64,000 bases of DNA from Mobula hypostoma (GCF_963921235.1 NC_086128.1:15500001-15564000), one strand, 5' to 3'; positions 689-64,000 are shown, counted from the stretch's first letter. Notes: a model not told the origin generated them from the letters alone. Program-made: numbers and translations.

Positions 689-749
689 GTATGAAGATGA
701 AATTAACATGCGCACAGAAAAAGAAAATGAATTTGTCATGATCAAGAAG
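689..749 (+). CDS. Keratin A exon 3 ([20 protein letters not shown])
   Basis: ttgcag acceptor, gtaggt donor, 61 bp. Confidence 0.95.
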
Positions 750-3700: not shown

Positions 3701-6700
3701 ATTAACAATATTTCTGTTTTAGTTCAGCGATATGAAGAAGAATTCTGGAAAATGTGCAGATGAGCTCCGTGTTGTGAAGACTGAGATCACAGAAATGCAA
3801 AGACAAAATGGAAGACTAACTTCTGAAATCCAGGCTTTGAAGCAACAAGTAAGAGCATTGTAAAATGCTTGTTCTTTTTTTTTCCCCCCTCTCTGAACTG
3901 ACTCCAGTTGAGAGTCCCAATTAACTTTCTACTGTTAGGGAGGGCGGACATACGACCTTCTCAATGGAGTCACAGAAACGGGTCCTTCCATCCAACTCAT
4001 CTGTGCTGCCAAAATGCCTTCCATATCCCTGACCTGTCCAAATGTCCTTTAATGTAATTGTATACATTCTCATCACTTCCCCTGCTAGCTCATTCCATAC
4101 ATCCACGTGTGTGTGCATGTGTGAATTTGATCTTCAGATCCCCTTTAAATCTTTTGCCTCACTTTAAACCTGTTATCTCTAGTCTTCGACGAATTTACTG
4201 TAAGAGTAGGTGGAAAAGATGGTGACTATTCACTTTGTCTATATCCCTCATGATCACCACTCTGCCTCATTTGCTCCAGGGAAAACAGTCCGAGCCTATC
4301 CAGCCCAAGCTCTCCTTGTAACTCGGACTTCCAGTCCTGGCAACATCCTTGTGAATCCTTTCTGCACCTTTCCCAACTTGTTGCCATCCTTCCTATAGCT
4401 AGCTGACCAGAGGGGCACTCAAGGTCCCAAGTGCACTGTCACCAATGTCTTGTACAGCAGTAACGTGATGTCTCAACTTTTATACTCTGCTCTGACTAAT
4501 AAAGTCAAGTGTGCTTTGTGTGTTACAGAAAGATGCGCTAGAGGCTGCAATTTCTGAGGCAGAAGACCGTGGAAAAAGGGCCATTATTGATGCTAAGAAC
4601 CGCATTACTGAACTTCAGAATGCCATTGAGAAAAACAACCAAGAAATGATCCGCCAAGTGCGAGAGTACCAGGAGCTGATGAACACCAAGCTTGCCCTTG
4701 ACATTGAAATTGCCACTTACAGGAAACTGCTTGAAGGAGAAGAGAGCAGGTTTGTACATTAACATTAATTGGGTTAAATTGCACTGAGTGATTCTCAAAG
4801 TTAAGTTTGCCATATGCACGATTGTATGTTTGCACAGGTGCAATGAAAGATAGATGTGCATTAAGGTTTTTCCTCAACTTGGGTGCTAGTTTGATGACTA
4901 CCTGAGGTGAAATGCAGTTAGTGACCTGCAAATGTGTTCCAGTCTTGGGCTGTTTTCTGAGAATGTAGCAAGAGGTTACTTTGGAGGCTGATCTAGTCAT
5001 CTTACTGGAATTGGTCGCTGGTGCAGCAGACATGTTGGACTGGATCTTTAGTGTTACTTGGGCATTCTAGGCAAAGGATCCAGCCCCTCAAAAAGCCTGG
5101 CTGCCCCATGTTGTATTTTTTTTGAGCTCCAAGTGGACATGTTCTTGATCTAAGCCTTTGATTATTCTGGGCTGTTCTTCACAACTGCTGAAAGGCGTGG
5201 GTATGTTTAAAATGCTGCACAAGTGTTGTAGCCCTAAAACTGTAAATGAAGTCTATACTCAGCCTGGAACATCGACTACCTATTTATTTCCTTATATGCT
5301 GCCTGCCCTGCTGAGTTCCTCCCAGAATTTTGTGTGTTGCTTTGGATTTCCAGCCTCAACAGCCTCATGTTTGTCCTATACTCCAAGTGCAGTGTTTATT
5401 AAAGTTGAATGTTTACTCATTTCCATAGATGCTGCCTGACCTGAGACCCTCCAGCATGTTGTGTGTGTTGCAATGAACCCTATTTATGATCTGGGGTGGG
5501 GGGGGGGGGCCTTTGCTCTGCAACACTTGGAGATGCACTGGTCTGTCAACTAGTTATATAATCTATAGCTCTGCATGAGACTGAATTGATTCCAAGGGGA
5601 AACAAGGGGACTAAATTCTGAATGAACATTTTGCTCTCGATGACGAGACTTGTGGATTACTTGAAGCTTCGGCAGAGTTTCTGCTCAAGGTTTCCAAAAA
5701 GAGGGGTTTTAAACTCTGTCCCCTCTATTGGACAGAACACTGGTAAAGTGCTTAATGACAAAAAAAAGTAATTCTTTGACAATCCTCTTCCTGAAAAGTA
5801 TATTAAAACTATCTATGCTAACTAGCCCTTGGAATAAAGTAATATTGATTCACTAATTTGTTAATGTTTAGCACCAATGGCTACAATAAAATTAAACATG
5901 TGAAGTAAATGTCATTTGAAATGTATTTTCAGTTTGGTCATTGAGGGAATTAAATGCAGCATCTCCAAGTTTGCGGATGGCTGAATGGCCTACTCCTGCA
6001 CCTATTTTCTATGTTTCTATTACCTCATCAAACAAAGTTACTCCAATTACTAAGGTAGAACCAATGGCTACAAATTTAAATTGGTTGAGAAGCAGTAGGA
6101 AATCAGTAGTAGGAAAGGGCTTGCTTGCCAGGCTGAGTTGTGGTATCTCCTCCAGAGCCTCTCCCACTACTTCACTTGGTATGTGTCAGGATTTGCCTCG
6201 TGACTGTTTGAAAAACATTAGGATTGGCTAGTCCCTGAGGCCTGACTGGGATACAACCCAGGTTACTATGGGAAGTGAAGGAAGAGATTGCTCCACCTTT
6301 GGTGATTTCTGCATCCTTGCTGGCCACAGGAGAAGTACCAAAAGATTGGAGAGTGGCACACACCTTAAAGAAAAGAAATACAATAAGGATAATCCTGGGA
6401 ATTATGAACCAGTGTTTCTTGTGTCAGTGGTGGGCAAACTATTGGAGAGATTCTTAGGGACAAGATCTAAGTAATTAGCAAAGCTGTCTTATTAGGGATA
6501 GTCAGCATGGCTTTGTGAGGGGCAGGTTATGTCTCACCAGTGGTGTCTCACAGGGATTTGTTCTAGGACCCCCTGCTCTTTGTAATTTTTAAAGAAGACT
6601 TGGATGAGGAAGTAGAAGGGTGAGTTACTAAGTTTGCAGATGGTATGAAGGTTGGTGGTATTGTGGATGATGTAGAAAGTTGTTGAGGGTTACAGTGGCA

Positions 6701-10100: not shown

Positions 10101-10739
10101 AGCAAAGGGCCCCCAGTAATCTTGCATTCCAGCCGTTGGACGCTAACCCTGGTCTGTTAAAGACTACGTGGTGGCTGCCTATGCTCGTGTATCGGCCTCC
10201 CCCTATTAAAGTCATGTGCAGGTGCTCTCCATTGGGGATGCACACGAACATCCAGGATTAAGTCCCGTGGTGATAAGTATTGAAGGGGGTAGGATTGAGG
10301 TCTGGAAGCCCCTAGTCATGAGGTAAGCACCTGAGGTCCCACCAGTTGACAACCCCTTAGGAGAGCATTGCAGTTGATTCAAGTGATTGCACAGATTCTC
10401 TCATACATGGCCATCAACTCTCCCAAATTCATCTGCACCAGGGGTAACTTAGTGGCCAATTAACTGAGAAGCAACATTTGGGAGATGATGGGTGTTTTAT
10501 CCTGATCGCAGTTTACATTCTGCCAAGGCAGATGTTAAGCAAGCATGCAATGTAGAGTGCCGTGGTTCTATCAAACAAGAAAAGCACTGCCTACCCCAAT
10601 GCCTTTCACATCACTGCTGGGGACTTCAGTCATGCTTGCTTGAAGGAATATCTGCTCAATTATTACCTGCAGCACCTGTAGTCCCAATACACTCGACCAT
10701 TGTTACACTACAATCAAGAATCTGATCGTGGTACGAATC

Positions 10740-15100: not shown

Positions 15101-15440
15101 CTGACACCTTTACTGCTCACTATCTTAGATTTATTTCTGTTTTCCCCCTCCTCCACTCTATCATTCTGGTTCCCATCCCCATGCCAAATTAGCTTAAACC
15201 CTCCCTAAGAGCTCTATTAAACCTTCCCGCCAGGATATTGGTCCCCTTCGGGTTCAGGTGTAACCCGTCCTTTTTGAACAGGTCATACTTCTCCCAGAAG
15301 AGATCCCAATGATCCAAGAATCTGAAGCCCTGCCCCCTGCACCAGTCTCTCAGCCACGCATTCATCTGCCTGATCCTACTATTCTTGCCCTCGCTAGCAT
15401 GTGGCACCGGTAGCAATCCCGAGATTACTACCCTGGAGGG
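12142..15440 (-). mobile_element. CR1 LINE, 5'-truncated within ORF1; frameshifted ORF2 (APE endonuclease + RT)
   Basis: ORF1 C-terminal SGNH-esterase-like part (KDGLHLN, 15189-15458); endonuclease LNARSIRNK and GSDHN; [12 protein letters not shown] and FADDTK; short tandem 3' tail at 12142. Confidence 0.93.
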
Positions 15441-15477
15441 TAGTAAGTCATAATTCATAATTCCTCAAAAGTCACAA

Positions 15478-15602
15478 ACAAGAGAACATCTGCAGATGCT
15501 GGAAATCCAAGCAACACACACAAAATGCTGGAGGAACTCAGCAGGCCAGGCAGCATCTATGGAAAAGAGTATAGTTGATGATTCAGGCTGAGTCACTTCA
15601 TC
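15478..15602 (-). repeat. Penelope terminal-repeat-derived fragment
   Basis: Homologous to 59487-59584; hammerhead core is degenerate. Confidence 0.65.
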
Positions 15603-24033: not shown

Positions 24034-26567
24034 TTTGAATGCCAAAATTGGGACTGGTTAAATTGATTGGGTTAAATTCCCGAGTAAATAAAAGGGCAAA
24101 CAGCAGAAATGGAGATTGAGGAATTTCTAAAGGTGCCAACCTTGGAGGCATTAGAGGATGCCAAGAAATCAGAATTGGTGACTGTTGCAAAACGGTTGAA
24201 TCTTTTTAAGGGGAAGCAGACAATGAGGAGAGTGGAGATGCACAGAGCCATCGTTAAGCATTATGTATCTAAAGGTGTGTTTCCCCACGGGGAGCTGGAG
24301 GTGGTATCTATGAGTAAAACCTGGTGGGGAGGCGGTGCAGCTGCAGATGGAAAAATTAAAGCTCGAGCATGAGTTCTGAGTAAAGCAGCTAGGAAGGGAA
24401 GAGAGAGAAGCAGCTAGAAAGGGAAGAGAGAGAGAAAGGCAGCTAGAACGGGAAGAGAGAGAGAGAAGCAGAAGGAAGGGGATTTTGAGCTGGAGAAGTT
24501 AAGGATAGCACTAGAGAGGGGCCAAATGCCGGACCAAGGTTGAGGGTTCAGGGTGGCCCAGGAGGTTAGGTTGGTTCCCCCATTTGAGGAGGCCGATGTT
24601 GATCGGTACTTTCTACATTTCGAAAAAGTCGCTGCAAGTCAGGACTGGCCGAGGGATAAGTGGGCTGTTTTGCTTCAGAGTGTGCTTAAGGGGAAGGCTC
24701 AGCAAGCTTACTCAGCATTGTCAGCAGAAGATGCCCAGAGGTAAGATGTGGTAAAAGAGGCGATACTCAGGATTTATGAGTTGGTCCGGAGGCATACCGG
24801 CAAAGGTTCTGGAATGTGAGGAAGCAGTGGGGCCGCACGTATTTAGTGTTTGCCCGTGAGATGCAGATGTATTGTGAGCGTTGGTGCGCCTCGAAAGGGG
24901 TCACTGGGAATTATGACAAACTGGTACAGCTAATACTGATTGAGCAATTTAAAGGTTGTGTCCCTGAAGGTATGAGGCCCTGCCTAGATGAGAAAGAGGC
25001 AGAATCCTTAGCCACAACTGCTAAGTTAGCGGATGAGTACGAGTTAACACACAAAGCAAAGTTTACCCCGAGTAAGAGCTACCAGAAGGGGAGTCGAGAG
25101 GGCGGAGAAAGTCTGCCAGCAAAGCCAGAAAGTAAGCCGGGGACTAGTGAGAAGGATAAGGAAGACCGGGAGCAGTTTGGTAGGAAGTCACCTGGGGTCA
25201 TATGCTATACTTGTGGGAAAGCTGGTCACATTGCATCCAGGTGTTTTGCCCCAAAGAAGGAGACGGGGAAAGGAAAAACGAAAACTCCGACTAGCTGTAT
25301 TGAGCCAGCAAACAAAAAGCTAGGGGAGAAGAGGTCTGATAGAGTTCAGGAAGGGTGCAAGAAGTTTACTTTGGCCAGATTGGTGTCAGTGAAGGAGGGG
25401 TCAAGCCCAGTTCCAGTACGGATCTGGAGAGACACTGGGGCTTGTCAGTCATTGATCTTAAGGAAGGTGTTACACTTTAGTGCAGAGACTGAGACTGGTG
25501 AGGTCAGTGTGATAAAAGGCATTGGGAAAGGGACTGAAGTAGTACCTTTGCACCAGATATACCTGAAAAGTGACTTGGTCTCCGGACCGGTCACGATAGG
25601 GGTGAGGTCCGAATTACCGTTGGAAGACGTGGAGGTCTTACTCGGTAACGACCTTGCAGATGGAGATGTGTATCCAGCAGTAAAGCTGACGAGCAAGCCT
25701 GCCAGGACTGAGGACCCGCCCATGGATTCACAGGTTTATCTCGCTTGCGCAGTAACTCGACGCATGTCGAAAAAGGCTGCCAAAGCGAATGTGGATTTAG
25801 CTGAGATGTTTTTACCAGCCTTGTACCAGGAGGGGTTAGAAAGTGAGAAGAAGGAGCATAGTGGAGCGGAAGGAAGTGAGGGAGTTGAGGTAGATTTATC
25901 ATTAGCGAGGAAGGAACTTATACAGGCACAGGAACGAGACGAGGAGCTGATGGTTTTGACGGAGACAGCTCTCTCTGAAGCAGAAATAAAAAGGGAACCA
26001 GTGGGCTATTATGTGAAGGAGGGAGTACCGATGAGGAAGTGGAGACCAAGTACCGTGCCCGCAGATGAGGAGTAGGGGGTGGTACACCAGGTGGTAGTGC
26101 CGAAAATTTATAGGGGCGAGATTTTTAACCCGGCCCACAAGATACCCCTCGGTGGACATTCTGGGGTGAGGAAAACAGTCAATAGAATTATGAAAGAGTT
26201 TTACTGGCCGAACATGAGGAAGGATATTATTGAATATTGTAGACGGTGTCATTCCTGTCAGGTGGTAGGAAAGCCAAACCAGGTCCTGCCTAAAGCGCCC
26301 CTTCGACTGATACCTGCTTTCGGGGAAACTTTTTCCCGAACAATTGTGGATTTTGTCGGTCCCCTGCCCAGAACTGTGAGTGGGCGACAGTATGTGATGA
26401 CTATGATGTGTGCCGCCATCAGGTTTCCGGAGGCTGTGGCCCTGGCAAGCGTCAAGTCTCCCGCAGTGGTAAAGGCGCTTGTGAAATTTTTCACTACGGT
26501 GGGGCTGCCCAGGGAAATCCAGTCAGATCAGGGGAGTGTCTTCACATCTCACACATTCCGACGCATT

Positions 26568-29530
26568 AAAAAGGGCCACTTTTCAACATAATTGTACAAG
26601 GGCTAAGAGAGTTGTAAAAGAGCGCCTGAAGGCTTTATGTGTCAATGCAAGGAGCATTCGTAATAAGGTGGATGAATTGAAAGTGCAGATTGTTATTAAT
26701 GATTATGTATAGTTGGGATCACAGAGACATGGCTCCAGGGTGACCAGGGATGGGAGCTCAACGTTCAGGGATATTCAATATTCAGGAGGGATAGACATGA
26801 AGGAAGGGGAGGTGGGGTGGCGTTGCTGGTTAAAGAAGAGATTAACGCAATAGAAGGGAAGGACATAAGCCGGGAAGATGTGGAATCGATATGGATAGAG
26901 CTGCGTAACACTAAGGGGCAGAAGACGCTGGTGGGAGTTGTGTACAGGCCACCTAACAGTAGTAGTGAGGTCGGAGATGGTATTAAACAGGAAATTAGAA
27001 ATGTGTGCAATAAAGGAACAGCAGTTATAATGGGTGACTTCAATCTACATGTAGACTGGGTGAACCAAATTGGTAAAGGTGCTGAGGAAGAGGATTTCTT
27101 GGAATGTATGCGGGATGGTTTTTTGAACCAACATGTCGAGGAACCAACTAGAGAGCAGGCTATTCTGGACTGGGTTTTGAGCAATGAGGAAAGGTTAATT
27201 AGCGATCTTGTCGTGAGAGGCCCCTTGGGTAAGAGTGACCATAATATGGTGGAATTCTTCATTAATATGGAGAGTGACATAGTTAATTCAGAAACAAAGG
27301 TTCTGAACTTAAAGAGGGGTAACTTTGAAGGTATGAGACGTGAATTAGCTAAGATAGACTGGCAAATGACACTTAAAGGATTGACGGTGGATATGCAATG
27401 GCAAGCATTTATAGGTTGCATGGATGAACTACAACAATTGTTCATCCCAGTTTGGCAAAAGAATAAATCAAGGAAGGTAGTGCACCCGTGGCTGACAAGA
27501 GAAATTAGGGATAGTATCAATTCCAAAGAAGTAGCATACAAATTAGCCAGAGAAAGTGGCTCACCTGAGGACTGGGAGAAATTCAGAGTTCAGCAGAGGA
27601 GGACAAAGGGCTTAATTAGGAAGGGGAAAAAAGATTATGAGAGAAAACTGGCAGAGAACATAAAAACGGACTGTAAAAGCTTTTATAGATATGTAAAAAG
27701 GAAAAGACTGGTAAAGACAAATGTAGGTCCCCTGCAGACAGAAACAGGTGAATTGATTATGGGGAGCAAGGACATGGCAGACCAATTGAATAATTACTTT
27801 GGTTCTGTCTTCACTAAGGAGGACATAAATAATCTTCCAGAAATAGTAAGGGACAGAGGGTCCAGTGAGATGGAGGAACTGAGTGAAATACATGTTAGTA
27901 GGGAAGTGGTGTTAGATAAATTGAAGGGATTGAAGGCAGATAAATCCCCAGGGCCAGATGGTCTGCATCCTAGAGTGCTTAAGGAAGTAGCCCAAGAAAT
28001 AGTGGATGCATTAGTGATAATTTTTCAAAACTCGTTAGATTCTGGACTAGTTCCTGAGGATTGGAGGGTGGCTAATGTAACCCCAATTTTTAAAAAAGGA
28101 GGGAGAGAGAAACCGGGGAATTATAGACCGGTTAGCCTAACGTCGGTGGTGGGGAAACTGCTGTAGTCAGTTATCAAGGATGTGATAACAGCACATTTGG
28201 AAAGCGGTGAAATGATCGGACAAAGTCAGCATGGATTTGTGAAAGGAAAATCATGTCTGACGAATCTCATAGAATTTTTTGAGGATGTAACTAGTAGAGT
28301 GGATAGGGGAGAACCAGTGGATGTGGTATATTTGGATTTTCAAAAGGCTTTTGACAAGGTTCCACACAGGAGATTAGTGTGCAAACTTAAAGCACACGGT
28401 ATTGGGGGTAAGGTACTGGTGTGGGTGGAGAATTGGTTAGCAGACAGGAAGCAAAGAGTGGGAATAAAAGGGACCTTTTCAGAATGGCAGGCGGTGACTA
28501 GTGGGGTACCGCAAGGCTCAGTGCTGGGACCCCAGTTGTTTACAATATATATTAATGACTTGGATGAGGGAATTAAATGCAGCATCTCCAAGTTTGCGGA
28601 TGGCACGAAGCTGGGCGGCAGTGTTAGCAGTGAGGAGGATGCTAAGAGGATGCAGGGTGACTTGGATAGGTTGGGTGAGTGGGCAAACTCATGGCAGATG
28701 CAATTTAATGTGGATAAATGTGAAGTTATCCACTTTGGTGGCAAAAATAGGAAAACAGATTATTATCTGAATGGTGGCCGATTAGGAAAAGGGGAGGTGC
28801 AACGAGACCTGGGTGTCATTATACACCAGTCATTGAAAGTGGACATGCAGGTACAGCAGGTGGTGAAAAAGGCCAATGGTATGCTGGCATTTATAGCGAG
28901 AGGATTCGAGTACAGGAGCAGGGAGGTACTACTGCAGTTGTACAAGGCCTTGGTGAGACCACACCTGGAGTATTGTGTGCAGTTTTGGTCCCCTAATCTG
29001 AGGAAAGACATCTTTGCCATAGAGGGAGTACAAAGAAGGTTCACCAGATTGATTGCTGGGATGGCAGGACTTTCATATGAAGAAAGACTGGATGAACTGG
29101 GCCTGTACTCGTTGGAATTTAGAAGATTGAGGGGGGATCTGATTGAAACGTATAAGATCCTAAAGGGATTGGACAGGCTAGATGCAGGAAGATTGTTCCC
29201 GATGTTGGGGAAGTCCAGAACGAGGGGTCACAGCTTGAGGATAGAGGGGAAGCCTTTTAGGACCGAGATTAGGAAAAACTTCTTCACACAGAGAGTGGTG
29301 AATCTGTGGAATTCTCTGCCACAGCAAATTGTTGAGGCCAGTTCATTGGCTATGTTTAAGAGGGAGTTAGATATGGCCCTTGTGGCTACAGGGGTCAGGG
29401 GGTATGGAGGGAAGGCTGGGGTGGGGTTCTGAGTTGGATGATCAGCCATGATCATAATAAATGGCGGTGCAGGCTCGAAGGGCCGAATGGCCTACTCCTG
29501 CACCTATTTTCTATGTTTCTATGTTTCTAT
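26568..29530 (+). mobile_element. Young CR1 LINE (near-complete ORF2) inserted in the Gmr1 integrase
   Basis: VNARSIRNK endonuclease start; ORFs 26817-28166 and 28182-29432 in the same frame, separated by one TAG; (TTTCTATG)n tail ending at 29530. Confidence 0.93.
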
Positions 29531-39469: not shown

Positions 39470-41150
39470 AAGCAATTCAGAATCCGAATCAGGTTTATTA
39501 TCACCGGCATGTGTTGTGAAATTTGTTAACTTAGCAGTAGCAGTTCAATGCAATACATAATAATATAGAAAGGAGGAAATTAAAAAATAAATCGATCAAT
39601 CACAGTAAGTATATATATGGAAATTGAGTAGATTAAAAATAGTGCAAAAACAGAAGTAATATATATATTTTTAGAAAGTGAGGTAGTGTTCATGGGTTCA
39701 ATGGCCATTTAGGAATCAGGTGGCAGAGGGGAAGAAGCTGTTCCTGAATCGCTGAGTGTGGATCTTCAGGCTTCTGTATCTCCTACCTGATGGTAACAGT
39801 GAGAAGAGGGCATTCCTGGGTGCTGGGGTCCTTAACGATGGACGTCGTCCTTCAGAGGCACCGCTCCTTGAAGATGTCTTGGATACTATGGAGGTGAGTA
39901 CCCAAGATGCAGCTGACCAATTTTACAACTTTCTATAGCTTCTTTTGGTCCTGTGCAGTAGCCCACTGCTCCCCCCTCCATAGCAGACAGTGATGCAGCC
40001 TGTCAGAATGCCCTCCACAGTACATCTACAGAAGTTTTCGAGTGTTTTAGTTGACAAACCAAATCTCTTCAAACTCCTAATGAAATATAGCCACTGTCTT
40101 GCTTTCTTTATAGCTGCATCGATATGTTGGGACCAGGTTAGATCCTCAGAGATCTTGACACCCAGGAACTTGAACTTGCTCACTCTCTCCACTTCTGATC
40201 CCTCTATGAGGATTGGTATGTGTTCCTTCATCTTACCCTTCCTGAAGTCCACAATCAGCCCTTTCATCTTACTGACATTGAGTGCAGGTTGTTGCTGTGA
40301 CACCACTCAACTGGCTGGTATATCTCACCCTGTACGAACTCTCATCTCCATCTGAGGTTCTACCAACAATGGTTGTATCATCAGCAAGTTTATAGATGGT
40401 ATTTGAGCTATACATAGCCACAGAGTCATGGGTATATAGAGAGTAGAGCAGTGGGCTAAGCGCACACCCCTGAGGTGTGCCAGTGTTGATCATCAGCGAG
40501 GAGGAGATATTATCACCAATCCATATAGGTTGTGGTCTTCCGGTTAGGAAGTCGAGGATCCAATTATGGAGGGGGGTACAGAGGTCCAGGTTCTGTAACT
40601 TATCAATCAGGACTGTAGGAATGATGGTGTTAAATGCTGAGCTATAGTCGATGAACAGCATCCTGACGTAGGTGTTTGTGTTGTCCAGGTGATCTAAGGC
40701 CATGTGAAGAGCCATTGAGATTGCATCTGCCATTGACTTATTGTGGCAATAGGCAAATTGCAATGGGTCCAGGTCCTCACTGAGGCAGGAGTTCAGTCTA
40801 GTCATGACCAACCTCTCAAAGCATTTCACCACCATAGATGTGAGTGCTACTGGGTGATAGTCATTAAGGCAGCTCACATTATTCTCCTTGGGCACTGGTA
40901 TAATTGTTGCCTTTTTGAAGCAGGTGGGAACAGTAGCAGTGAGAGGTTGAAAATGTCCTTGAATACTCCCACTAGTTGGTTGACACAAGTTTTCAGAGCC
41001 TTACCAGGTACTCCGTTGGGGCCTACCACTTTGCGAGAGTTCACCCTCCTTAAAGATAGCCTAATATTGACCTCCAAGATAGAGATCACAGGGTCACTGG
41101 GTGTGGCAAGGATCTTCACAGCCGTAGCTATATTCTCCCTCTCAAACAGG
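39470..41150 (-). mobile_element. Rex1/Babar LINE, 5'-truncated
   Basis: [41 protein letters not shown]; (tctgat)-type tail near 39475. Confidence 0.88.
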
Positions 41151-46220: not shown

Positions 46221-47301
46221 TCCGGTTCAGATTAAAGCATCTGCACTCTTGTATCAGCCTTCAACCATCTCTCCATCAGCCTCTCTAAAGCACTCTGTAA
46301 TAGCTGCCTACTTGATCTATTTAAAATGGCTCTGATTCATGGTTTCACACCAGTGAAGTGTCATGTGTTATGAATTGTGTTATATAAATGCAAACTATTG
46401 TTATTACTTCTCCAACAGTGGGCTACTGCAAATATTCAGCGACAACAGAGGTGTCTCTGATGTCCAAGATCAACAACGCAGCTTTTACAGGGTATTTTTG
46501 TTTTGCCTTTTTAAGATATATTTTCACTCTTTTAATTAAAAAAAAAATGAGAATTAAATCTTCATATGAACTTCAAACAGCCTGGGTTGGGTTATCTTCC
46601 AAAGAATCTTGGTGGTGGTGATGACACTCATGGTCAAAAATCAATTAAACTATTTAATTGGCTTGGCACAGAATCATGCAACTAAAGCACACGTTCCAAT
46701 TCCAATTGGATCAATGTACGAATAGGCTTAAATGTTGCCCAATTACAATGAAATATGCAACAAGTGTCAAAATGCCCATACAACGGAATAAACAAGTGTT
46801 CTGGTTTAACTTCGTTCTCTTTCACTCCCCTAAACTCAAGTTTTAATGTATTCTTCCCAAATCATGGCTCCTGCTGCGATATTCTTTTCTGTTTTTCACA
46901 AGCCAGCCCCGATAGTTTATTTTTCTCTCTGCACCGTGATTTTCTAAGTAATGTAAAGGAGATGATTTTAATGTTCCACATTTACAAGAGTTCGAGTTTT
47001 AAATGATTGTATATTACACATAGACAAACAGAAACACGCAAGCAATTTCAAGGGACATTGAAGGACGAGCTCCATATTCTTCCACCTCAGCAGCATCATC
47101 AGCTCTGTTGTACTTGAACTGAATACCGGAAAGAGGCTGCAGATTTGCTCATGGACAAAGGAGATTGCTTAATTTGTAACACTGGCCAAAAGAAATTTCA
47201 ATCCACAAAGGATCGCTCGTCTGCTGCTCAGCCCACTTCTCTGTACGATAAATATCAAACACCGGTCAAGTGGGCACAGCAGTCCACAGTCTTTTAATGC
47301 A

Positions 47302-47628
47302 CTTGATCGGCGTTGCTTGAGCAACTGGAGGGAGCTCTTCTTGTTTCCCGGACTCGCTCATTCTTGCTGACGCCAGTTTGGCCCGAGGCACCGAGAGCGG
47401 TTACCGTGCACAAGCGGACAGGTTGGAACCCATGGGAGAGGGTGTGCCGAGCTCCTCCTCTATCTCGATGTCACCATGCCCATTTCTGTCAGCTGACACC
47501 CCGACCAAGCCCAGATCCGCACTGCTCATAAAAGCAGCTCAAAGCCGCTCTCACCTGCGCCAGCAGTTCAGATCGGGACTGATCGCTCCAGCAAACTCGT
47601 AACCAGAGAACAAAACTCTAATTTCACC
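47302..47628 (+). promoter_or_regulatory. Keratin B proximal promoter and 5' UTR, TATA-like CATAAAA at 47527-47533
   Basis: CATAAAA about 100 bp upstream of the ATG; Kozak-like caccATG; CpG-rich; 47302-47576 is duplicated at 63726-64000. Confidence 0.75.
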
Positions 47629-48015
47629 ATGAGCGTCTCTTACACCCAAAAGTCCTTTAGACAGACCACGCAGCTTTCAGGCGGCCCATCGATGCGGTCT
47701 AGTGTTGCCGGCTCCGTGGGGTCGTCGCGAAGAATTAGTAGCAGAAAGGCGATGAGTGTGTCTGGAGCTGGAATTGGAACAGGTATCGGAGGGTCAAGAC
47801 GTATGCTTTCTGGCTCATCGATCAAGCTTAGTTCAGGCTACAATTCAGGTTACGGTTCAGGTTTAAGGTCAAATTTCAGTTCTAGTTCGATGATGCCGGC
47901 CCTTGATCTAAGCGCCCCACTACCACAAAATGACACCAGTCTGCAACAAGTTCGTATGCAGGAAACGAGGGAGCTGACTACGCTCAACAACCAGTTCGCA
48001 AGTTTCATAAACCAG
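47629..48015 (+). CDS. Keratin B exon 1 (head and start of coil 1A, ...[15 protein letters not shown])
   Basis: ATG to cag|gtaccg. Confidence 0.93.
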
Positions 48016-51000
48016 GTACCGTACCGTATCCAGCTCTGTCTGTAACCCGCTGCTGCGCCTGTCTTGGCAGCATTGTGCAAATGTCTCTTTTCACTTCCTC
48101 GCCAGCTCAATGCAAAAATCTAAGCGTGTGTTCATTCCTCACCCGCAGGTTCGCCTTCTCGAACAGCAAAATGCTCAGCTGAAGGTCAAACTGGAGCTTC
48201 TGAAGAGGCAGGGGACCTACACCTCCAACATCGATAACATGTTCCAAACTTACATTGACAACCTCAAGAGGCAACTGGAAACTCTTGGGCAGGAGAAGCT
48301 GAAGTTCGAATCGGACCTTGTGCAGATGCAAGGTCTAGTTGAGGACTTTAAGGGCAAGTAAGTGTACTGTCTCCCACCAGGATTTCCCAACTCGTCCCGT
48401 ATCTGTTCACTGGTTCAGAGAGAAAAAAAGAGCGGAATCGGGCAAATCGTGGGCGGGGTAAACGTTCGAACAATTCCCGGTTACAATCAGCTATTTTCCA
48501 CTGGGTTTCTTTGTAACCTAACAGCAGCTAGTGGAGGTCTGGAAGCTGGGTCGGGCAAGTGCCCGTCGGGGAGAGCTCCGTTAAGACTGAGGTCTGGATA
48601 GAGAGGTGTCACTCAGAGCTCAGGGAGTCACCGAAATAGCCGTCAGTTCAGGGACGGCAGCGTATGTTGTTTCATTCCGTCGAGGCGCGGCACGGTCGAC
48701 CTGTCTGGCGTAGCGGGATGCTGTGTCTTGCGGAATCAAATGTCAGGAAGAGCGGTGCACACACGGGGATAAATAGAAGTGTGAGGAAATCATGGCTAAG
48801 CAGCAGGGAGCAGGGAGTTCCGACAACCAGCATGGCCCTGTCGAAGAAATGGGACAGAAATGTTGATTTCCAAGGGATTGCCAGTAACGTCAGTGGTTCA
48901 TTTCAGATACGAAGATGAAATTAACAAGAGAACTGAAATGGAAAACGAGTTTGTCATGGTGAAGAAGGTGAGCACTATTTTCTAGCTCTCTGCAGGACCA
49001 TATCAGTGGTCTTCAATAGATTTACAAACCTTGTGCCCTACTCTCTCCAGGATGTTGATGAATCCTACATGAACAAGGTGGAATTGGAAGCAAAACTAGA
49101 AAGCCTGACTGATGAAATTGAATTCCTGAAGACAATCTTCCAAGAGGTAAATATGCTACATGGTGCAAGAGCCTTCTGGTCCTTTTGCTGTTCAATTCCA
49201 TCTCCTTACACTAGTTTTGCTCTGCCCATCTTTAGGAAATCCGTGAGCTGGAGTCACAGATTCAGAACACTGCTGTCAGCGTGCAGGTGGACACTAGCCG
49301 CAACCTGAACATAGACCAGATCATCAGTGAAGTCAAGGCCCAATACCAAAGTATGGCAGATAAATGCCGTGATGATGCCGAGAACTGGAAAAAGGCGAAG
49401 GTGAGCTCCAGCTCCAGCCCCACGTAGAAGTGCATTGATAGCTCTGACCTCTGTGCTGGGAGGAGAAACCCTTACTGACGTCTACCAGTGTCTCCTTGCA
49501 GATGGTGGAACTCAGCACAATGCCTGGAGGTCATGCGGAAGAAGTGCGAGTGATCAAATCGGAGTGTAATGATCTGCAGAATCGCATCCGTAAGCTGACT
49601 GGGGACATCGAGTATCTGAAGCAGCAGGTAAGTCAGGAAGTGAAAGCAAACAAGAGATCTTGGTTGCGGCCTAACGACGGTAGCAAAATGTCTTTCCTCT
49701 CAAGTCCCGAGTTCTAATGCAGCGACACGACCCAAATGGTCAATAATTCTTTTTGCCTTCACGGATGCTACTTCACCCGCTGATCTTCTGCAGTAGTTCT
49801 GCTATTTTCTTACTCCAGACTGCAGCATCTGCCGTCTCTTGCATCTGCACTTTTCTCTTCCCAGCCCAAAGCAAATGACCAAGAGACAGCTGAAACACAG
49901 GTCAATCTGAGCTAAATCATACACTGGGGAACTTTCAGTAGTAACAACCTGGCTGGTTCCTTCCACTGTAACCCTGGTGAACTCGATTACTCCTAAGCCA
50001 ATCTGCAATACTCTACTCTCAGTATGGCTCTTTCCGATAGCAGGGTGGGGATGTTGGCAAGGCTTCATGTTATAATCTGCAAAAATGTCCACACTAACCT
50101 CTGTGTGACTCAGCGTTTGAAACTGGAGGCTGCGATCGCTGAAGCAGAGGAACGTGGCGAGATGTCTCTCAAAGACAGTAAACAAAATATCGTTGATCTG
50201 CAAGAAGCCATCAGGAAAGCAAAACAGGAGATTGCCAAGCAAACTCGTGAAATCGACGAGCTGATAAATGTCAAGCTGGCTCTGGATATCGAAATTAACA
50301 CCTACAGTAAACTACTGGCGCAAGAGGAAATCAGGTAGGGCTTTGGTCTTTTCCAAGTTGCAGATATCACACTGGGTTGATGCCACAGTCCTGCGTACTT
50401 GCAGATTACAATCTGTACAGGCTCTTTATTGCACTCTTCATTCCTAGAGTCTTTGTCTTTAATGGGGCATTTGGTCCAGGGAGCGGCACTTACTTTTGTT
50501 TAAAGGCTGGTTTTCATCTGACCCCAGAAATACATCAGACTCACTCTCCGAATGAACATCTAGTCAGTGATTCAGTCACCACTAGGTGAACTCTCCCCTG
50601 ATGCTGCAGTGGATGAAGCATTGTACAACATAAGCAGGCTGACGAATAGCTCCCTGCGCACACTGACGAGGCTACTGCTGTTCACCAGCAGCACTGGAAC
50701 TTACAGAATCAGTGTCTCGGGCAAGGCTCGACAGAGTCAATGTGCCCATCAACTTCACCCATGCAGCTCATTGCTGCTTTCAGAAGGAAACCCTTGGTAA
50801 CTTGAAAAAGATATATTTCTGAACATCCTAGAAATGGCTGTTGTTACACAAGTGTTTCCTTTATCAACAGGATGGTAGAAGGCGTCAAAACCCTCAGCGT
50901 CCAACAAGTTTCACAGCAAGGTAAGAGAACGTATAATCCTTGCTTGAGATTTTAACTACTGACCAAAACACAAAACGCAAAATGAAAAATGGAATATTCT

Positions 51001-54000
51001 GGAAATATTCTTCATTCTTCTCCAAGTCTTGATACCTCATTGTTCTGTTTACAAATCATTCTGTTGTACATTTTCAGAGCAGTGGTACTCATTTCTGTGA
51101 TTGTATTTCTTATGAATGTTTTCCAAATGATTTTCCTGAATTGATATCATCAATGGTTCACTGTCCTTTGTTGCTCTCTTCTCCCTTTCACATGCTCTAA
51201 AATTACTCTTCCCAAAAAAGGCTCACATTTAACATTTCCTTCTTATAAATCAACACCCTCTTTGACATCTTTCTGTTGCCTTCAGTCCTCAAATGTCCCG
51301 TTGCGTCCTAAATTGGGGTTGAATGACACCCTGACACCCCATACGATTGTGACCATGGTCAGCAATGCCTCTTTGTCCTTTCTTTACCTGTCTGCAACAA
51401 AAGATGCCATTGCTTGTTTAATCATCGTCCAATGATAGGAAACAGCTTCTTACCCCAGGCCATAAGACGAATGAATTCCCTGCCACCTCTCAGGTCTCAT
51501 CACACATGAAGCACCAGTAGCGTTATACTGTTTACTTTTTAACTTGTGTTGTCAATGCACCCTTATTATTTGTTAATTTATTTGTGGCTATATTACTTTA
51601 TGTGTTCTGTGCCAGTTGTATATACCATGTTGTGCACTTTGGTCTGGAGGAGTACTGTTTCGTTTGGCGGTATACATGTGTACGATTGAATGACAATAAC
51701 CTTGAACTTGAACAATGCTTCACCTTTGAATAGTCCTTCCCTGTTCTCATTTGGTAGGCAGATTATTTCCTATAATCCAAAGTCTGCAAAGGCCTATTTC
51801 TCACCTATGATCATGATCTCAGTGATAGCATCCAAAACCGAGCATCGCATTCCTCTGATACTGTGAAAAAATGCAGATGCTACAAATATGAAATTTAAAA
51901 ATTACACTGGAAATACGCAGCAGGCCAGGTAGCATCCAAGGGAAGAGCAATAGAGTCAATGTTTCATGTCAAAAGTCGCTCATCAGAACTGAGAAAGAAA
52001 GAAAGTAAGAGTTTTAAGTTGCCAGGAAGGTGGGGGACAGGTCAATAGGACCAAGGGAGTATCTCAGATAGGGGGAAGCCAAGATTGCTATTTAGATAAG
52101 TTGTTGGCGTCACCCAGTCGACGGGTTAATCGGGGCAGTTAGAGAGTGAGAATACAAAGAGAGGAGCTTGACAAGGTGTGAAATGTCAGGCTGTCTGACG
52201 TGTCCAGTCGGCCAGGCCTACTTTTAAAGTGAGGTAAATCAGTGTGCAAATAGAGGAATTAAGTTCCCTTATGTCGCCGTACTCAGTTTCAAGTGGAGAA
52301 GGCAGCAACATGGCCCAGACAGAAAATGAGTTGCAAAGCGCATGTTGGTCCTCCTTATATCAGCATATTATAAATTGAATATTAGAAATTGAAGCCACAG
52401 ACAGAGGTCAGAGTGGGAGATGGATGGAGAGTTAAATAGGCAACAAAAGGGAGCTTTGGTCACTCCTGGTGCTCTGCAATGTTGTCACTCCGTCTGCAGC
52501 TGGTGGAGGAAACCACACTGTGAACACTGAGTGCAAGACACTAGATTGAAAGAAGTGCAAGTGAATTGTTGCTCCAACTTGAGGGACTGTTTGCATCCCC
52601 AGACACTGGGAAGGAAAGAGGTGAACGGACAGGTGTAGCATCTCCTGTAATTTCACAAAACACGCAGTGACATTGGGATAGAAGACAGTTGCCCAGGGAA
52701 TCACAAAGGGAACAGTCTCGTTTACATGATGAAAGGCAGGGAAGGTATGGACGTATCCAGTTGTGGAATATTGTGGAAGCTGGTGCAAATTGTAAAGGAT
52801 GAGCTGTTAAACACTGAGCTGGTGAGGTGGAAGATAATGACTAGAGGATCTCTGTCCTTGCTCTGTCTGACAGGTGAGGGATGGAGAGCAGAGATGCAGG
52901 AAATAGATGAACTACGGCCAAAAACTCCATTGACTGTGGTAGAGGAGAAAGTACAGGTCATGGTAGAAGTCATTTTAGAAACACATGAAAGTCTTTAACA
53001 ATTCCTGCAATAAGTTTATTTTCAATCAAAGCTACCGTAGTCTTAGTGGCCACTCTTATTAGGTACCTGCTCATGGTCTTCTGTTGCTGTAGCACATCCA
53101 CTTCAAGGTTTAACCATTATGTGCCTTTCAGATGCTCTTCTGCACACCACTGTTGTGACACGTAGTAATTTGAGTTACTGTCGTCTTCCTGTCAGCTTCA
53201 ACCAGTCTGGCCTTTCTCCTCTGACTTCTCTCATCAACAAGGCTTTTTCACTCACAGAACTTCCACTCACTGATTGTCCTTGTTTTGTGTACCATTCTCT
53301 GTAAACTCTAGAGACTGTTGTGCACGAAAATCCCAGGAGACCAGCAGTTCTTGAGATACTCAAATTATCCCGTCTGACACCAACAATCATTTGGGTCAAC
53401 GTCACTTCGGTTACATTTCTTCCCCCATCTGATGTTTGATCTGAACAACTGAACCTCTTGAACATGTCTGCATGCCTTTGTGCACTGAGTTGCTGCCACA
53501 TAATTGACTGATTAGATATTTGCATGAGCCAGCAGGTGTACAAGGTGTGCCTAATAAAGAGGCCACTGAATGTATGTTGTCCATTTTATAAATTATTCTA
53601 CCCCCCATCATCTTTTGTGCTCACTGACTTATAGAAACATAGAAAATAGGTGCAGGAGTAGGCCATTCGGCCCTTCGAGCCTGCACCACCATTTATTATG
53701 ATCATGGCTGATCATCCAACTCAGAACCCCGCCACAGCCTTCCCTCCATACCCCCTGACCCCCGTAGCCACAAGGGCCATATCTAACTCCCTCTTAAATA
53801 TAGCCAATGAACTGGCCTCAACTGTTTCCTGTGGCAGAGAATTCCACAGATTCACCACTCTCTGTGTGAAGAAGTTTTTCCTAATCTCGGTCCTAAAAGG
53901 CTTCCCATCTATCCTCAAACTGTGACCCCTCGTTTTGGACTTCCCCAACATCGGGAACGATCTTCCTGCATCTAGCCTGTCCAATCCCTTTAGGATCTTA

Positions 54001-54843
54001 TACGTTTCAATCAGATCCCCCCGTCAATCTTCTAAATTCCAACGAGTACAAGCCCAGTTCATCCAGTCTTTCTTCATATGAAAGTCCTGCCATCCCAGGA
54101 ATCGATCTGGTGAACCTTCGTTGTACTCCCTCTATGGCAAGGATGTTTTCCTCAGATTAGGGGACCAAAACTGCACGCAATACTCCAGGTGTGGTCTCAC
54201 CAAGGCCTTGTACAACTGCAGTCGTACCTCCCTGCTCCTGTACTCGAATCCTGTCGCTATAAATGCCAGATAAATGCTATAAATATTGGCTCCTAAACTG
54301 ATATACCTCAGTTTTAGGATCTGAGTCTTCAAATCTTTCCATAGCATTGATCTTCCCTATCTCTGTAAACGACTCTGCACACCCTGAGCCATGACTGATG
54401 GGATGCCACTCATGGATAAGTAGTTCCTACATTTCAGTGATTTCTTTCTCAAAATTTCATTTCCACCTTTTTTCTCTTTCCTGTAAAATTTATCATTTCA
54501 AAATGCTTTGATATATCTGTATACATAAAATCTTAGAGTCAAGCATTTGCTTACTAAAAGTTACCTGAAGCACTTGGGGCTGTCTTTCTCTGTTAAGATT
54601 GCGACCTGCTTGATGTCATTGCAATTGTTTTCTCAATTTCAGGATCCATATTCTAAAGTGTCTTTTTCCTTTCCTCTCCCTTTTACAGGAAGTTTTGGGG
54701 ATTTCAGCAGCGCAAGTAGTGGTATGTCTGGCTACCTCAAAGGGGGCAGTGAGATGGAAACTGGTGGAAAAAGAGCAGTAATTCTGAGCTCAGTGCAGCA
54801 GACCTCTACAAGCAGAAGTGGATCTTCAATCAATCAGTTATAA
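47629..54843 (+). CDS. Keratin gene B: divergent type II (K8-like) keratin, complete, 489 aa
   Basis: join(47629..48015,48149..48357,48907..48967,49051..49146,49236..49400,49502..49627,50114..50334,50871..50920,54689..54843) = 1470 nt, open frame, all GT-AG; canonical 209/61/96/165/126/221 exons; Ser/Gly/Arg-rich head. Confidence 0.94.
48149..48357 (+). CDS. Keratin B exon 2 (VRLLEQQN...GLVEDFKG)
   Basis: 209 bp; ccgcag acceptor, gtaagt donor. Confidence 0.95.
48907..48967 (+). CDS. Keratin B exon 3 ([20 protein letters not shown])
   Basis: 61 bp; tttcag acceptor, gtgagc donor. Confidence 0.95.
49051..49146 (+). CDS. Keratin B exon 4 ([32 protein letters not shown])
   Basis: 96 bp; ctccag acceptor, gtaaat donor. 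Confidence 0.95.
49236..49400 (+). CDS. Keratin B exon 5 ([24 protein letters not shown]...ENWKKAK)
   Basis: 165 bp; ctttag acceptor, gtgagc donor. Confidence 0.95.
49502..49627 (+). CDS. Keratin B exon 6 ([16 protein letters not shown]...YLKQQ)
   Basis: 126 bp; ttgcag acceptor, gtaagt donor. Confidence 0.93.
50114..50334 (+). CDS. Keratin B exon 7 (...[20 protein letters not shown])
   Basis: 221 bp; actcag acceptor, gtaggg donor. Confidence 0.94.
50871..50920 (+). CDS. Keratin B exon 8 ([16 protein letters not shown])
   Basis: caacag acceptor, gtaaga donor; phase 2 in, phase 1 out. Confidence 0.85.
51865..52990 (-). mobile_element. Old Penelope-like element fragment in keratin B intron 8
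   Basis: ISALHPSP...[10 protein letters not shown] is homologous to the Penelope at 60300-60540; terminal repeat with hammerhead-like core at 51955-51990. Confidence 0.65.
53040..53572 (-). mobile_element. Non-autonomous Tc1/mariner derivative with HTH remnant
   Basis: agtggccact.ttattagg / cctaataaagaggccact TIRs; [30 protein letters not shown]. Confidence 0.75.
53631..54269 (-). mobile_element. 5'-truncated CR1, same subfamily as 26568-29530
   Basis: High identity by eye to 28885-29522, including the 3' tail. Confidence 0.9.
54689..54843 (+). CDS. Keratin B exon 9, tail ([51 protein letters not shown])
   Basis: Long polypyrimidine tract plus cag acceptor; Ser/Gly-rich tail in the correct phase; TAA at 54841-54843. 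Confidence 0.82.
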
Positions 54844-55184
54844 ACTACTGTCAGTTATGTCTCTGGTGACTCTCTTGCCAGTTTTTATACTTCATTCACA
54901 TAGCCTGTTCAGTGAAGTGGTTAACTTGTTTAGATTAACTTTCTGCCTGATCTTGGAATTCTACTCAATTTTACATCGTTAAGCAACATGAAATTAACTG
55001 ATACACAGCAAACGTCAAGTTAGTCTGTAACTTGGGTTTGTGGGAAAAGTGGAAAGTTCATCCTTTACTTCTTGGGCCTTTGAATATAGGAAATTAATCA
55101 AAGTTTTAGATGTGGTGCTCTGATTTGTGATTTTGACTCACTTTATGTTGGGGATTTATCTTTTGTGGCATTTCTGTAATACTG

Positions 55185-55190
55185 AATAAA
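55185..55190 (+). terminator. Probable polyadenylation signal of keratin B
   Basis: AATAAA about 340 bp after the stop codon. Confidence 0.6.
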
Positions 55191-63465: not shown

Positions 63466-63725
63466 AACTACCCATAGGGAATATGAGGTGCTGTTCCTCT
63501 AGCATGATCCTAGCAATTCAGGAGTCCAGGGCAGTCAGGTCGGTATGGGAATTCGGAGGGCAAGTAAAATGACCGGGAACCGGGAGCTGCTTCCAAAATG
63601 TCCCAGCATGCCTTGCAATGCTGGAGATACTCTGAATCTACCACCTACCTGTACAATGTATCTCAACCACCGTGGGTCAGGTGGGTTGGGCAGTCAAACT
63701 GACACTTAATGGTCGTTTCTCCGCT

Positions 63726-64000
63726 CTTGATCGGCGTTGCTTGAGCAACTGGAGGGAGCTCTTCTTGTTTCCCGGACTCGCTCATTCTTGCTGACGCCAG
63801 TTTGGCCCGAGGCACCGAGAGCGGTTACCGTGCACAAGCGGACAGGTTGGAACCCATGGGAGAGGGTGTGCCGAGCTCCTCCTCTATCTCGATGTCACCA
63901 TGCCCATTTCTGTCAGCTGACACCCCGACCAAGCCCAGATCCGCACTGCTCATAAAAGCAGCTCAAAGCCGCTCTCACCTGCGCCAGCAGTTCAGATCGG
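63726..64000 (+). promoter_or_regulatory. Promoter and 5' end of a probable third keratin gene (copy of the keratin B promoter); CDS beyond the window
   Basis: 275 bp reading identical to 47302-47576 (offset 16424), including CATAAAA at 63951-63957. Confidence 0.8.

What the first reader, a model, noticed from the sequence alone, without database searches (positions are those of the whole stretch)
50114..50334. Intact keratin whose near-invariant IF signature [10 protein letters not shown] has become [10 protein letters not shown]
Seen: keratin B has a full open frame, canonical splice sites, a TATA-like box and a polyA signal. Yet coil 2B ends [31 protein letters not shown], versus [31 protein letters not shown] in neighbouring keratin A. 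Several changes need multiple nucleotide substitutions (YQ to ID, A to N, EG to AQ) while coil 1B stays conserved, which argues against random decay. Known: this is the most conserved motif in intermediate filaments, and substitutions in it cause dominant filament-collapse diseases. Inference: a possibly undescribed, duplicated elasmobranch keratin subfamily with altered assembly, for example a specialised partner, short or non-filamentous polymers, or a specialised skin or secretory tissue. This is the strongest novelty candidate in the window.
Basis: partly seen in the sequence, partly recalled or inferred. Interest (0 to 1): 0.8.

Follow-up and report, generated by a model that had tools for sequence, protein, structure and literature searches.

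The report
Stingray keratin with altered rod-end motif
This is an intact, strongly transcribed keratin gene of a devil ray in which the nearly universal filament motif [10 protein letters not shown] reads [10 protein letters not shown]; the change is old, shared by stingrays, and part of a fast-evolving shark-and-ray branch of the keratin 8 family.

Summary
Exon 7 (50114-50334) belongs to a complete 9-exon type II keratin gene. Its 489-aa product is identical to RefSeq XP_062892983.1, "keratin, type II cytoskeletal 8-like" of Mobula hypostoma.

- **Expression:** RNA contigs from three organisms are spliced at the five junctions covered, exon 4 to exon 9. Exons are roughly 100-fold deeper than introns.
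- **Conservation:[11 protein letters not shown] is not private decay. It is identical in three M. hypostoma genes, at least six M. birostris accessions and two tandem Hemitrygon akajei genes.
- **Relatives:** The sawfish orthologue is intermediate (NTYQKLLEGEE). Skates, a cow shark and the chimaera K8 are canonical. Several sharks have other departures.
- **Family:** The gene sits in a fast-evolving, tandemly amplified elasmobranch clade inside the K8 family. That clade includes the Scyliorhinus K8 entry (UniProt Q9YH07), so the subfamily is not undescribed.
- **Structure:** The changes fall on heptad b, c and e positions, and the a/d core is kept. The 1A start motif has changed too.

Altered assembly is plausible but untested. 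The type I partner and the tissue are unknown. A first-stage note on the adjacent window (s1-143942) flagged the same motif in the downstream copies.

The parts
47527..47534 (+). TATA-like box (cataaaag), about 95 nt upstream of the ATG
   Evidence: Read directly. It lies inside the 278-nt block that is 100% identical to 63723-64000.
47629..48015 (+). Exon 1: head domain and start of coil 1A. It ends ...[11 protein letters not shown], and the 1A start motif occupies 47983-48015.
   Evidence: ATG at 47629 and a GT donor after 48015. The protein is identical to P0386.
48149..48357 (+). Exon 2 (209 nt): [15 protein letters not shown]... The rest of the 1A start motif occupies 48149-48172.
   Evidence: AG/GT boundaries. 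Exon 2 is also 209 nt in the Pristis and Heptranchias orthologues.
48907..48967 (+). Exon 3 (61 nt)
49051..49146 (+). Exon 4 (96 nt)
   Evidence: An RNA joint links 49146 to 49236 with GT..AG ends in all four runs.
49236..49400 (+). Exon 5 (165 nt)
   Evidence: An RNA joint links 49400 to 49502.
49502..49627 (+). Exon 6 (126 nt)
   Evidence: An RNA joint links 49627 to 50114.
50114..50334 (+). Exon 7 (221 nt): end of coil 2B. This is the finding.
   Evidence: Pfam Filament, E 8e-18. RNA contig depth is about 3640 in X1, against 23-42 in the flanking introns.
50297..50329 (+). Variant helix termination motif [11 protein letters not shown]
   Evidence: Heptad positions are N=b, S=e, A=b and Q=c. 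The a/d positions (I, Y, L, E) are unchanged.
50871..50920 (+). Exon 8 (50 nt): (R)[16 protein letters not shown]
   Evidence: RNA joints link 50334 to 50871 and 50920 to 54689.
54689..54843 (+). Exon 9: tail GSFGDFSS...INQL and the stop codon
   Evidence: RNA depth is 1601 in X1.
55185..55190 (+). AATAAA polyadenylation signal
   Evidence: Its use was not checked with reads, because the laid stretch ended at 54999.
4529..4749 (+). Exon 7 of neighbouring keratin A, which has the canonical [11 protein letters not shown]. It serves as the comparison.
63723..64000 (+). Start of the next tandem copy, the twin gene. Its promoter is 100% identical to 47299-47576.
   Evidence: The period is 16424 nt.

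Best explanation
Keratin B is a working type II keratin of Mobula hypostoma. It belongs to a fast-evolving, tandemly amplified elasmobranch offshoot of the keratin 8 family.

In this offshoot the two normally near-invariant rod-end motifs, the start of coil 1A and the end of coil 2B, are free to vary. In the lineage leading to stingrays the 2B end changed stepwise. A became N, and R became Q or S, before or around the split from sawfish. EG then became AQ in the stingray stem. The new form, [11 protein letters not shown], has been kept unchanged since then, in both twin genes.

The changes sit on the outward-facing heptad positions b, c and e, and the hydrophobic a/d core is intact. The protein should therefore still form a coiled-coil heterodimer with a type I keratin.

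What should differ is the surface of the 1A-2B contact that locks successive tetramers and aligns them laterally. The motif loses one arginine and one glutamate, and its glycine is replaced. The 1A start also loses K, D and K. I expect ordinary-looking filaments with a tolerant or co-adapted partner, but with changed lateral or interlock contacts.

Shown here: gene integrity, expression, conservation, family placement and heptad positions. Inferred: all effects on assembly.
For: - **Integrity:** the nine-exon model is identical to RefSeq P0386. The Pfam Filament domain is full length, 1-312 of 313, at 297 bits.
- **Expression:** spliced RNA contigs with GT..AG joints were found at all five junctions covered. 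Exon depth is 1600-3640 against intron depth 5-42 in X1, with the same pattern in X2, X5 and X10. Exon-7 words occur in runs of many samples of organisms A, B and D.
- **Conservation:** the motif is identical in three M. hypostoma proteins, at least six M. birostris accessions and two Hemitrygon genes. Mobula and Hemitrygon are 76% identical overall and 83% in the rod, but 29 of 30 at the rod end. The exon-7 differences listed for related organisms are all synonymous.
- **Stepwise history:** shown by the alignment and trees.
- **Family placement:** the chondrichthyan clade has support 100/100 inside a K8 family supported 100/99. The elasmobranch clade (96/89) follows the species tree and contains Scyliorhinus K8.
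- **Constrained but fast:** dN/dS against Pristis is 0.38 for the whole gene and 0.33 for the rod. The path from the K8 node to winB is about 0.76 changes per site, against about 0.14-0.17 for primate and catfish K8.
- **Heptad register:**
- **Role of the motif, from papers:** the R/KLLEGE ends are needed for lateral alignment but not for elongation (PMC2289655). The conserved 1A and 2B ends meet in an interlock between tetramers (PMC11189308).
Against: - No assembly, partner or tissue data exist, so the mechanistic part is inference only.
- Variation at the same sites in several sharks suggests these positions may simply be dispensable in this subfamily. In that case the change has no functional consequence.
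- 29 of 30 identity at the rod end is no stronger than in other conserved blocks of the same protein. Coil 1B has many 30/30 windows.
- dN/dS for the last 30 codons is 0.64 against Pristis and 1.2 against Heptranchias, from too few sites to separate relaxation from adaptation.
- Codon data within stingrays could not be obtained.
- Twin genes are homogenised within each species, so the many copies count as only two independent lineages, Mobula and Hemitrygon.
Confidence: 0.65

Rival explanations
1. Neutral relaxation. In this K8-like subfamily the b, c and e positions of the rod-end motif are not needed. The stingray version is one of several harmless drifts, and filaments and partners are ordinary.
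For: At least four independent departures at the R/E/G sites occur within 24 elasmobranch rows, against one in 25 other rows. The start of coil 1A also varies across the clade, with no simple pairing to the 2B changes. Rod dN/dS of 0.3-0.5 is fairly high. A paper abstract states that known human K8/K18 variants do not reorganise the cytoskeleton, unlike epidermal keratin mutations (PMC4545365).
Against: Within each sublineage the derived form is fixed. It is identical between Mobula and Hemitrygon, identical across three skate genera and lgn156, and identical between Mustelus and lgn217. The rod end is one of the four best-conserved blocks between Mobula and Hemitrygon. G to Q needed two nucleotide steps.
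Confidence: 0.3
2. Specialised non-canonical polymer. With both rod ends altered, the protein builds something other than 10-nm filaments, as filensin does in lens beaded filaments, or it forms an orthogonal pair that does not mix with canonical keratins.
For: Filensin has a modified start motif (LGER) and end motif (RYHRIIE(I/N)EG) and forms beaded filaments (PMC10626283). Keratin B has changes at both ends. The gene is tandemly amplified and abundant in RNA.
Against: The rod length, the exon sizes, the a/d core and the rest of coil 2B are those of a standard type II keratin. Filensin also lacks 29 residues of coil 2, and nothing of that kind is seen here. A member of the same clade is recorded as shark K8 (Q9YH07).
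Confidence: 0.1
3. Decaying duplicate, sequencing or assembly error, or a private change of this individual.
For: None found. The only point in its favour is that the gene lies in a tandem array, where young duplicates often decay.
Against: The frame is open and identical to the RefSeq model. RNA contigs of organism A match exons 5-9 without a single difference and are correctly spliced. The same motif is present in other species and genera.
Confidence: 0.01

Closest known systems
Keratin 8 (KRT8) family of type II keratins
   Same: The gene has nine exons, with inner exons of 209/61/96/165/126/221/50 nt, as in the Pristis and Heptranchias orthologues; keratin A shares the five covered in the window, exons 3-7. 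The Filament domain is full length. The gene falls inside the K8 clade, supported 100/99, against K75, K6A and K1b.
   Different: The rod-end motif is [11 protein letters not shown], and the 1A start is [19 protein letters not shown] instead of LNN(K/R)FASFIDKVRFLEQQN. There is no Pfam type II head match, although the chimaera K8 lacks one too. The rod evolves about 4-5 times faster than in bony-vertebrate K8. The gene is tandemly amplified rather than single copy. No type I gene lies within the 42 kb upstream.
Scyliorhinus stellaris keratin 8 (UniProt Q9YH07; the shark keratin catalogue of Schaffeld et al. 1998 is cited in PMC1896152)
   Same: It is a member of the same elasmobranch clade and sits with Mustelus, as the species tree predicts. 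It also departs from the consensus, reading GTYRTLLEREE.
   Different: It has a different set of substitutions: R is kept, K became T and G became R. The SKLLAQEE form is not present. The 1998 paper could not be read here.
Helix termination motif mutations of epidermal keratins and other intermediate filament proteins (epidermolysis bullosa simplex and related diseases)
   Same: The same ten-residue stretch is involved. Papers place disease substitutions in the 1A/2B interlock region (PMC11189308) and call variations in these motifs disease-causing (PMC10626283).
   Different: Here the changes are fixed, inherited across genera and carried by abundantly transcribed genes. They avoid the a/d core positions. 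Whether they would be harmful in a K5 or K14 context was not tested.
Filensin (BFSP1) of lens beaded filaments
   Same: It is a natural intermediate filament protein with both the start and the end motifs modified (PMC10626283).
   Different: Filensin has a shortened coil 2 and forms beaded filaments with phakinin. Keratin B has a standard-length rod and type II keratin gene structure. There is no evidence of a non-filament polymer.

Membership tests
Intermediate filament protein (Pfam PF00038) | Full-length central rod domain matching the Filament profile | tested here: met
   P0386 (= keratin B) residues 111-421 match profile positions 1-312 of 313, with E 3.4e-88 and 296.7 bits.
Type II keratin | Nine-exon gene with the conserved type II intron positions | tested here: met
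   The inner exon sizes 209/61/96/165/126/221/50 are identical in the Pristis and Heptranchias orthologues. Sizes 61/96/165/126/221 are identical in keratin A. The match to the human type II exon sizes is from memory and was not tested.
Type II keratin | Type II head domain (Pfam PF16208) | tested here: not met
   There is no hit in P0386 or P0162. There is also none in Callorhinchus K8. The domain is present in primate K8, E 2.6e-12.
Type II keratin | Obligate heteropolymer with a type I keratin | not testable with these tools
   No type I sequence of a ray could be reached. No type I exon lies in the window.
Intermediate filament consensus | Helix termination motif [10 protein letters not shown] at the end of coil 2B | tested here: not met
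   The motif reads [10 protein letters not shown], so 7 of 10 residues match and R, E and G are replaced. A and Q occur at those sites in 0 of 377 other motif instances.
Intermediate filament consensus | Conserved start of coil 1A (LNN(K/R)FASFIDKVRFLEQQN in K8-type keratins) | tested here: inconclusive
   It is recognisable but altered: K to Q, D to N, K to Q and F to L.
Keratin 8 family | Phylogenetic placement with K8 proteins rather than epidermal type II keratins | tested here: met
   In the careful rod tree the K8 clade is supported 100/99 and the chondrichthyan subclade 100/100. The best elasmobranch match to chimaera K8 is a member of this clade, Heptranchias P0172.
Keratin 8 family | Head-to-head arrangement with a krt18 gene (bioRxiv 10.1101/2020.05.06.063123) | tested here: inconclusive
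   No intermediate-filament-like exon lies on either strand between keratin A and keratin B, or downstream as far as 64000. Neighbours within 10 kb in Hemitrygon and Heptranchias are same-strand copies. A krt18 gene could lie further away.

The most novel reading that the evidence does not exclude
The elasmobranch K8-like subfamily may have rebuilt both halves of the intermediate filament interlock, the 1A start and the 2B end. In stingrays the SKLLAQEE keratin may then work with a co-evolved type I partner as a private pair. Its filaments would differ in lateral packing or dynamics from canonical keratins and might not mix with them. If so, this is a natural experiment showing which parts of the 'invariant' motif can be replaced.
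Probability: 0.15. Interest if true: 0.75.

Novelty: new variant of a known kind. Interest (0 to 1): 0.45.

Why it matters
The rod-end motif is treated as the hallmark of intermediate filament proteins, and single substitutions in it cause dominant skin and other diseases. Here three of its ten residues are replaced in abundantly transcribed genes, and the replacement is identical in two stingray families. Related sharks carry other replacements at the same sites.

This gives a set of natural variants for asking which contacts of the motif are needed for dimer formation, lateral alignment and the 1A-2B interlock. The variants comprise stingray, sawfish (intermediate) and skate (canonical) orthologues of one gene. 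It also shows that the elasmobranch 'K8-like' genes are not ordinary K8.

Tried and rejected
- **Pseudogene, error or private decay.** Rejected on the open frame, the exact RefSeq match, spliced RNA and cross-genus conservation.
- **Undescribed family.** Rejected. The clade is annotated as K8-like in many genomes and includes the Scyliorhinus K8 entry.
- **Paired co-variation of the 1A and 2B ends across the clade.** No simple pattern was found. Skates have an altered 1A with a canonical 2B, and Pristiophorus shows the reverse.
- **Codon test inside stingrays.** My exon-chain search failed for Amblyraja. YN00 estimates on short regions were unstable, so NG86 values are quoted.
- **Type I partner.** No tool route reached a ray type I keratin, and all three homologue searches went to type II questions.
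- **Alternative last exon inside this gene.** Rejected. The other tail, seen as a loose end at 50924, is not in the window and belongs to the downstream twin.
- **Tissue of expression.** Run names are coded and library descriptions are empty.
- **Hagfish-type thread keratins.** Considered from memory but not tested separately, because the tree places the gene firmly in the K8 family.
- **Structure prediction.** Not run. A single-chain model of a coiled-coil protein would not address dimer or tetramer contacts.

Full report
**1. What is in the sequence**

Positions 50114-50334 are a 221-nt exon flanked by AG and GT.

The whole gene could be assembled from nine GT-AG exons: 47629-48015, 48149-48357, 48907-48967, 49051-49146, 49236-49400, 49502-49627, 50114-50334, 50871-50920 and 54689-54843. 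The frame is 1470 nt and gives 489 aa.

That protein is identical, residue for residue, to P0386 = XP_062892983.1. This entry is "keratin, type II cytoskeletal 8-like" of Mobula hypostoma. The window is therefore devil-ray DNA, and the gene is already in RefSeq under an automatic name.

A TATA-like box lies at 47527 and an AATAAA at 55185. Keratin A, upstream on the same strand, has the canonical [11 protein letters not shown] in its exon 7 at 4529-4749. No other intermediate-filament-like exon lies on either strand of the window.

**2. Is it expressed?**

Logan contigs of four runs from three coded organisms were laid on 49000-54999.

- In run X1 the exon contigs have word depths of 1600-3640.
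- Intron contigs have depths of 5-42.
- All five junctions in the stretch are bridged with GT..AG ends in X1, X2 and X10; X5 lacks the exon 7 to 8 joint. The junctions run from exon 4 to 5 through exon 8 to 9.
- Contigs of organism A match exons 5-9 without a single difference.

The runs are only guessed to be RNA, but spliced contigs at the predicted junctions settle that.

A loose end after 50924 carries the start of a different tail. That tail is not in the window. It matches P0162, the product of the downstream twin gene. Its promoter begins at 63723 and is 100% identical to 47299-47576. Exon 9 of keratin B has about half the depth of exons 5-7, as expected if both twins are transcribed.

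Exon-7 words occur in runs of many samples of organisms A, B and D. The tissues are not disclosed.

**3. Is the variant motif private or conserved?**

A search of 1.84 billion cluster representatives with exon 7 found no LLAQEE among the best 150 matches. It did give the closest full-length relative, a skate protein (P0020). Searches seeded with that protein and with the Hemitrygon protein retrieved the chondrichthyan relatives.

| Lineage | Rod-end motif |
|---|---|
| M. hypostoma (3 proteins), M. birostris (at least 6 accessions), Hemitrygon akajei (2 tandem genes) | [11 protein letters not shown] |
| Sawfish (Pristis) | NTYQKLLEGEE |
| Three skates, cow shark (Heptranchias), chimaera K8 | canonical RKLLEGEE core (skates and chimaera read [11 protein letters not shown]) |
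| Pristiophorus | STYGTLLQGEE |
| Heterodontus | ATYMKLLEGEE |
| Scyliorhinus | GTYRTLLEREE |
| Mustelus | ATYDSLLQGEE |
| Hemiscyllium | NTYMKILDTEE |
| Chiloscyllium | GTYMKLLETEE |

Parsimony gives at least four independent departures at the R/E/G sites inside the clade, against one among 25 other rows. Among 377 other motif instances these sites are 96-98% invariant, and none has A or Q.

Mobula and Hemitrygon proteins are 76% identical overall and 83% in the rod. At the rod end they are 29 of 30 identical. The other best-kept blocks are the segment before coil 1A, coil 1B and the start of the tail.

The exon-7 nucleotide differences listed for related organisms are all synonymous: three sites.

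**4. What family is it?**

The gene structure is that of a type II keratin. The same inner exon sizes occur in the Pristis and Heptranchias orthologues, and in keratin A for exons 3-7. Pfam finds a full-length Filament domain but no type II head. The chimaera K8 lacks the head too.

A careful rod tree was run with K75, K6A and K1b as the distant side.

- A K8 family is recovered with support 100/99.
- Within it a chondrichthyan clade has support 100/100. It holds keratin A, Callorhinchus K8 and an elasmobranch clade.
- The elasmobranch clade has support 96/89 and its branching follows the species tree. It contains Scyliorhinus stellaris K8 (Q9YH07).

With the chimaera K8 as query, the only elasmobranch protein among the best 120 matches was a member of this clade.

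The clade evolves fast. The path from the K8 node to keratin B is about 0.76 changes per site, against about 0.14-0.17 for primate or catfish K8. Pairwise dN/dS is 0.33-0.5 in the rod.

The gene is tandemly amplified in several species:
- at least 2-3 copies in M. hypostoma;
- at least 6 accessions in M. birostris;
- 2 genes in Hemitrygon;
- at least 3 copies in Heptranchias.

Twin genes have near-identical heads and rods within a species. Each carries one of two tail types that are conserved across Mobula, Hemitrygon and Pristis. This points to gene conversion over the head and rod.

A preprint reports two krt18/krt8 head-to-head pairs in vertebrates, from sharks onward (10.1101/2020.05.06.063123). 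No krt18 was seen near these genes, so positional orthology is open.

**5. How it probably works**

In the local heptad register of the last 49 rod residues, 10 of 14 a/d positions are hydrophobic. In that register N is b, S is e, A is b and Q is c. All a/d residues are retained, and Y to I at an a position is conservative. Dimer formation should therefore be preserved.

General coiled-coil geometry predicts that an e-position Arg pairs with the partner's g-position Glu five residues earlier. I recall such a Glu-Arg bridge from the vimentin 2B crystal structure, but this was not checked here. R to S removes that bridge on the type II side.

Two papers bear on the motif's role. Wilson and colleagues found the R/KLLEGE ends necessary for lateral alignment but not for elongation (PMC2289655). 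The vimentin filament structure places the conserved 1A and 2B ends together in an interlock between successive tetramers (PMC11189308).

Keratin B has changes in both halves of that contact. At the 1A start, K became Q, D became N, K became Q and F became L. The start reads [19 protein letters not shown].

My best reading is a normal heterodimer whose tetramer-to-tetramer and lateral contacts are altered, working with a tolerant or co-adapted type I partner. This is inference. The main rival is that these surface positions are simply dispensable in this subfamily.

Filensin is a precedent for modified end motifs in a non-canonical polymer (PMC10626283). Its rod is also shortened, which is not the case here.

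**6. Selection**

Against Pristis, dN/dS is 0.38 for the gene and 0.33 for the rod. It is 0.64 for the last 30 codons, and 1.2 against Heptranchias. Thirty codons are too few for a conclusion. The values fit a burst of amino-acid change at the rod end but do not prove adaptation.

At the codon level, G to Q, Y to I and Q to D each took two steps. E to A and R to S took one. The sawfish Q and the stingray S are most simply independent changes from AGG.

**7. Novelty and verdict**

No paper in the library holds LLAQEE or TYSKLL. The 1998 shark keratin paper could not be read.

The gene is known to annotation, and its clade includes a published shark cDNA. What appears new is that this clade has released both rod-end motifs, and that stingrays carry a fixed three-residue replacement. 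I rate it a new variant of a known kind, of moderate interest.

An earlier first-stage note on the adjacent window (s1-143942) flagged the same motif in the downstream copies. Notes s1-142115 and s1-143941 described the twin genes and the identical promoter. I confirmed the promoter identity, and partly confirmed the twins.

Noticed in passing
window 47299-47576 and 63723-64000; proteins P0386/P0162, P0165/P0383, P0160/P0387: The tandem twin genes have identical promoters and near-identical heads and rods within a species. Their two tail types differ (ending ...SSINQL in Mobula versus ending ...ISALQ or ...STLQ), and each tail type is conserved across Mobula, Hemitrygon and Pristis. This looks like gene conversion over the head and rod that stops before the tail exons.
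   Followed up: partly
window 53000-54400 (intron 8 of keratin B): Repeat-rich stretch with very high RNA contig depth, up to about 170,000, and many irregular joints. It includes a transposase-like ORF on the minus strand at 53175-53543. It is probably an abundant interspersed repeat and not part of the keratin transcript.
   Followed up: no
window 39923-40988, minus strand: Reverse-transcriptase-like ORFs of 127 and 239 aa, the remains of a retroelement in the 42-kb spacer between keratin A and keratin B.
   Followed up: no
window 689-4749 and about 9010-9117: Keratin A is cut at the window start, so only exons 3-7 and a tail exon are seen. It is a long-branch member of the chondrichthyan K8 clade with a canonical rod end. 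Its tail exon ends in a K8-type ...[11 protein letters not shown]... segment.
   Followed up: partly
tree: Lungfish K8 (P0224) groups with the chondrichthyan clade (97/87) and not with tetrapod K8. This may reflect the two ancient krt8 loci reported in the keratin-cluster preprint.
   Followed up: no
run X18 and X19: Some exon-7 words occur in marine and aquatic metatranscriptome runs, possibly ray RNA shed into the water.
   Followed up: no
L004 (Heptranchias perlo), genes at 1-2357, 10001-16763, 24421-26763: The cow shark has at least three same-strand tandem copies of the orthologue (518, 518 and 520 aa), spaced about 14 kb apart. All are collapsed into one 90% cluster.
   Followed up: no
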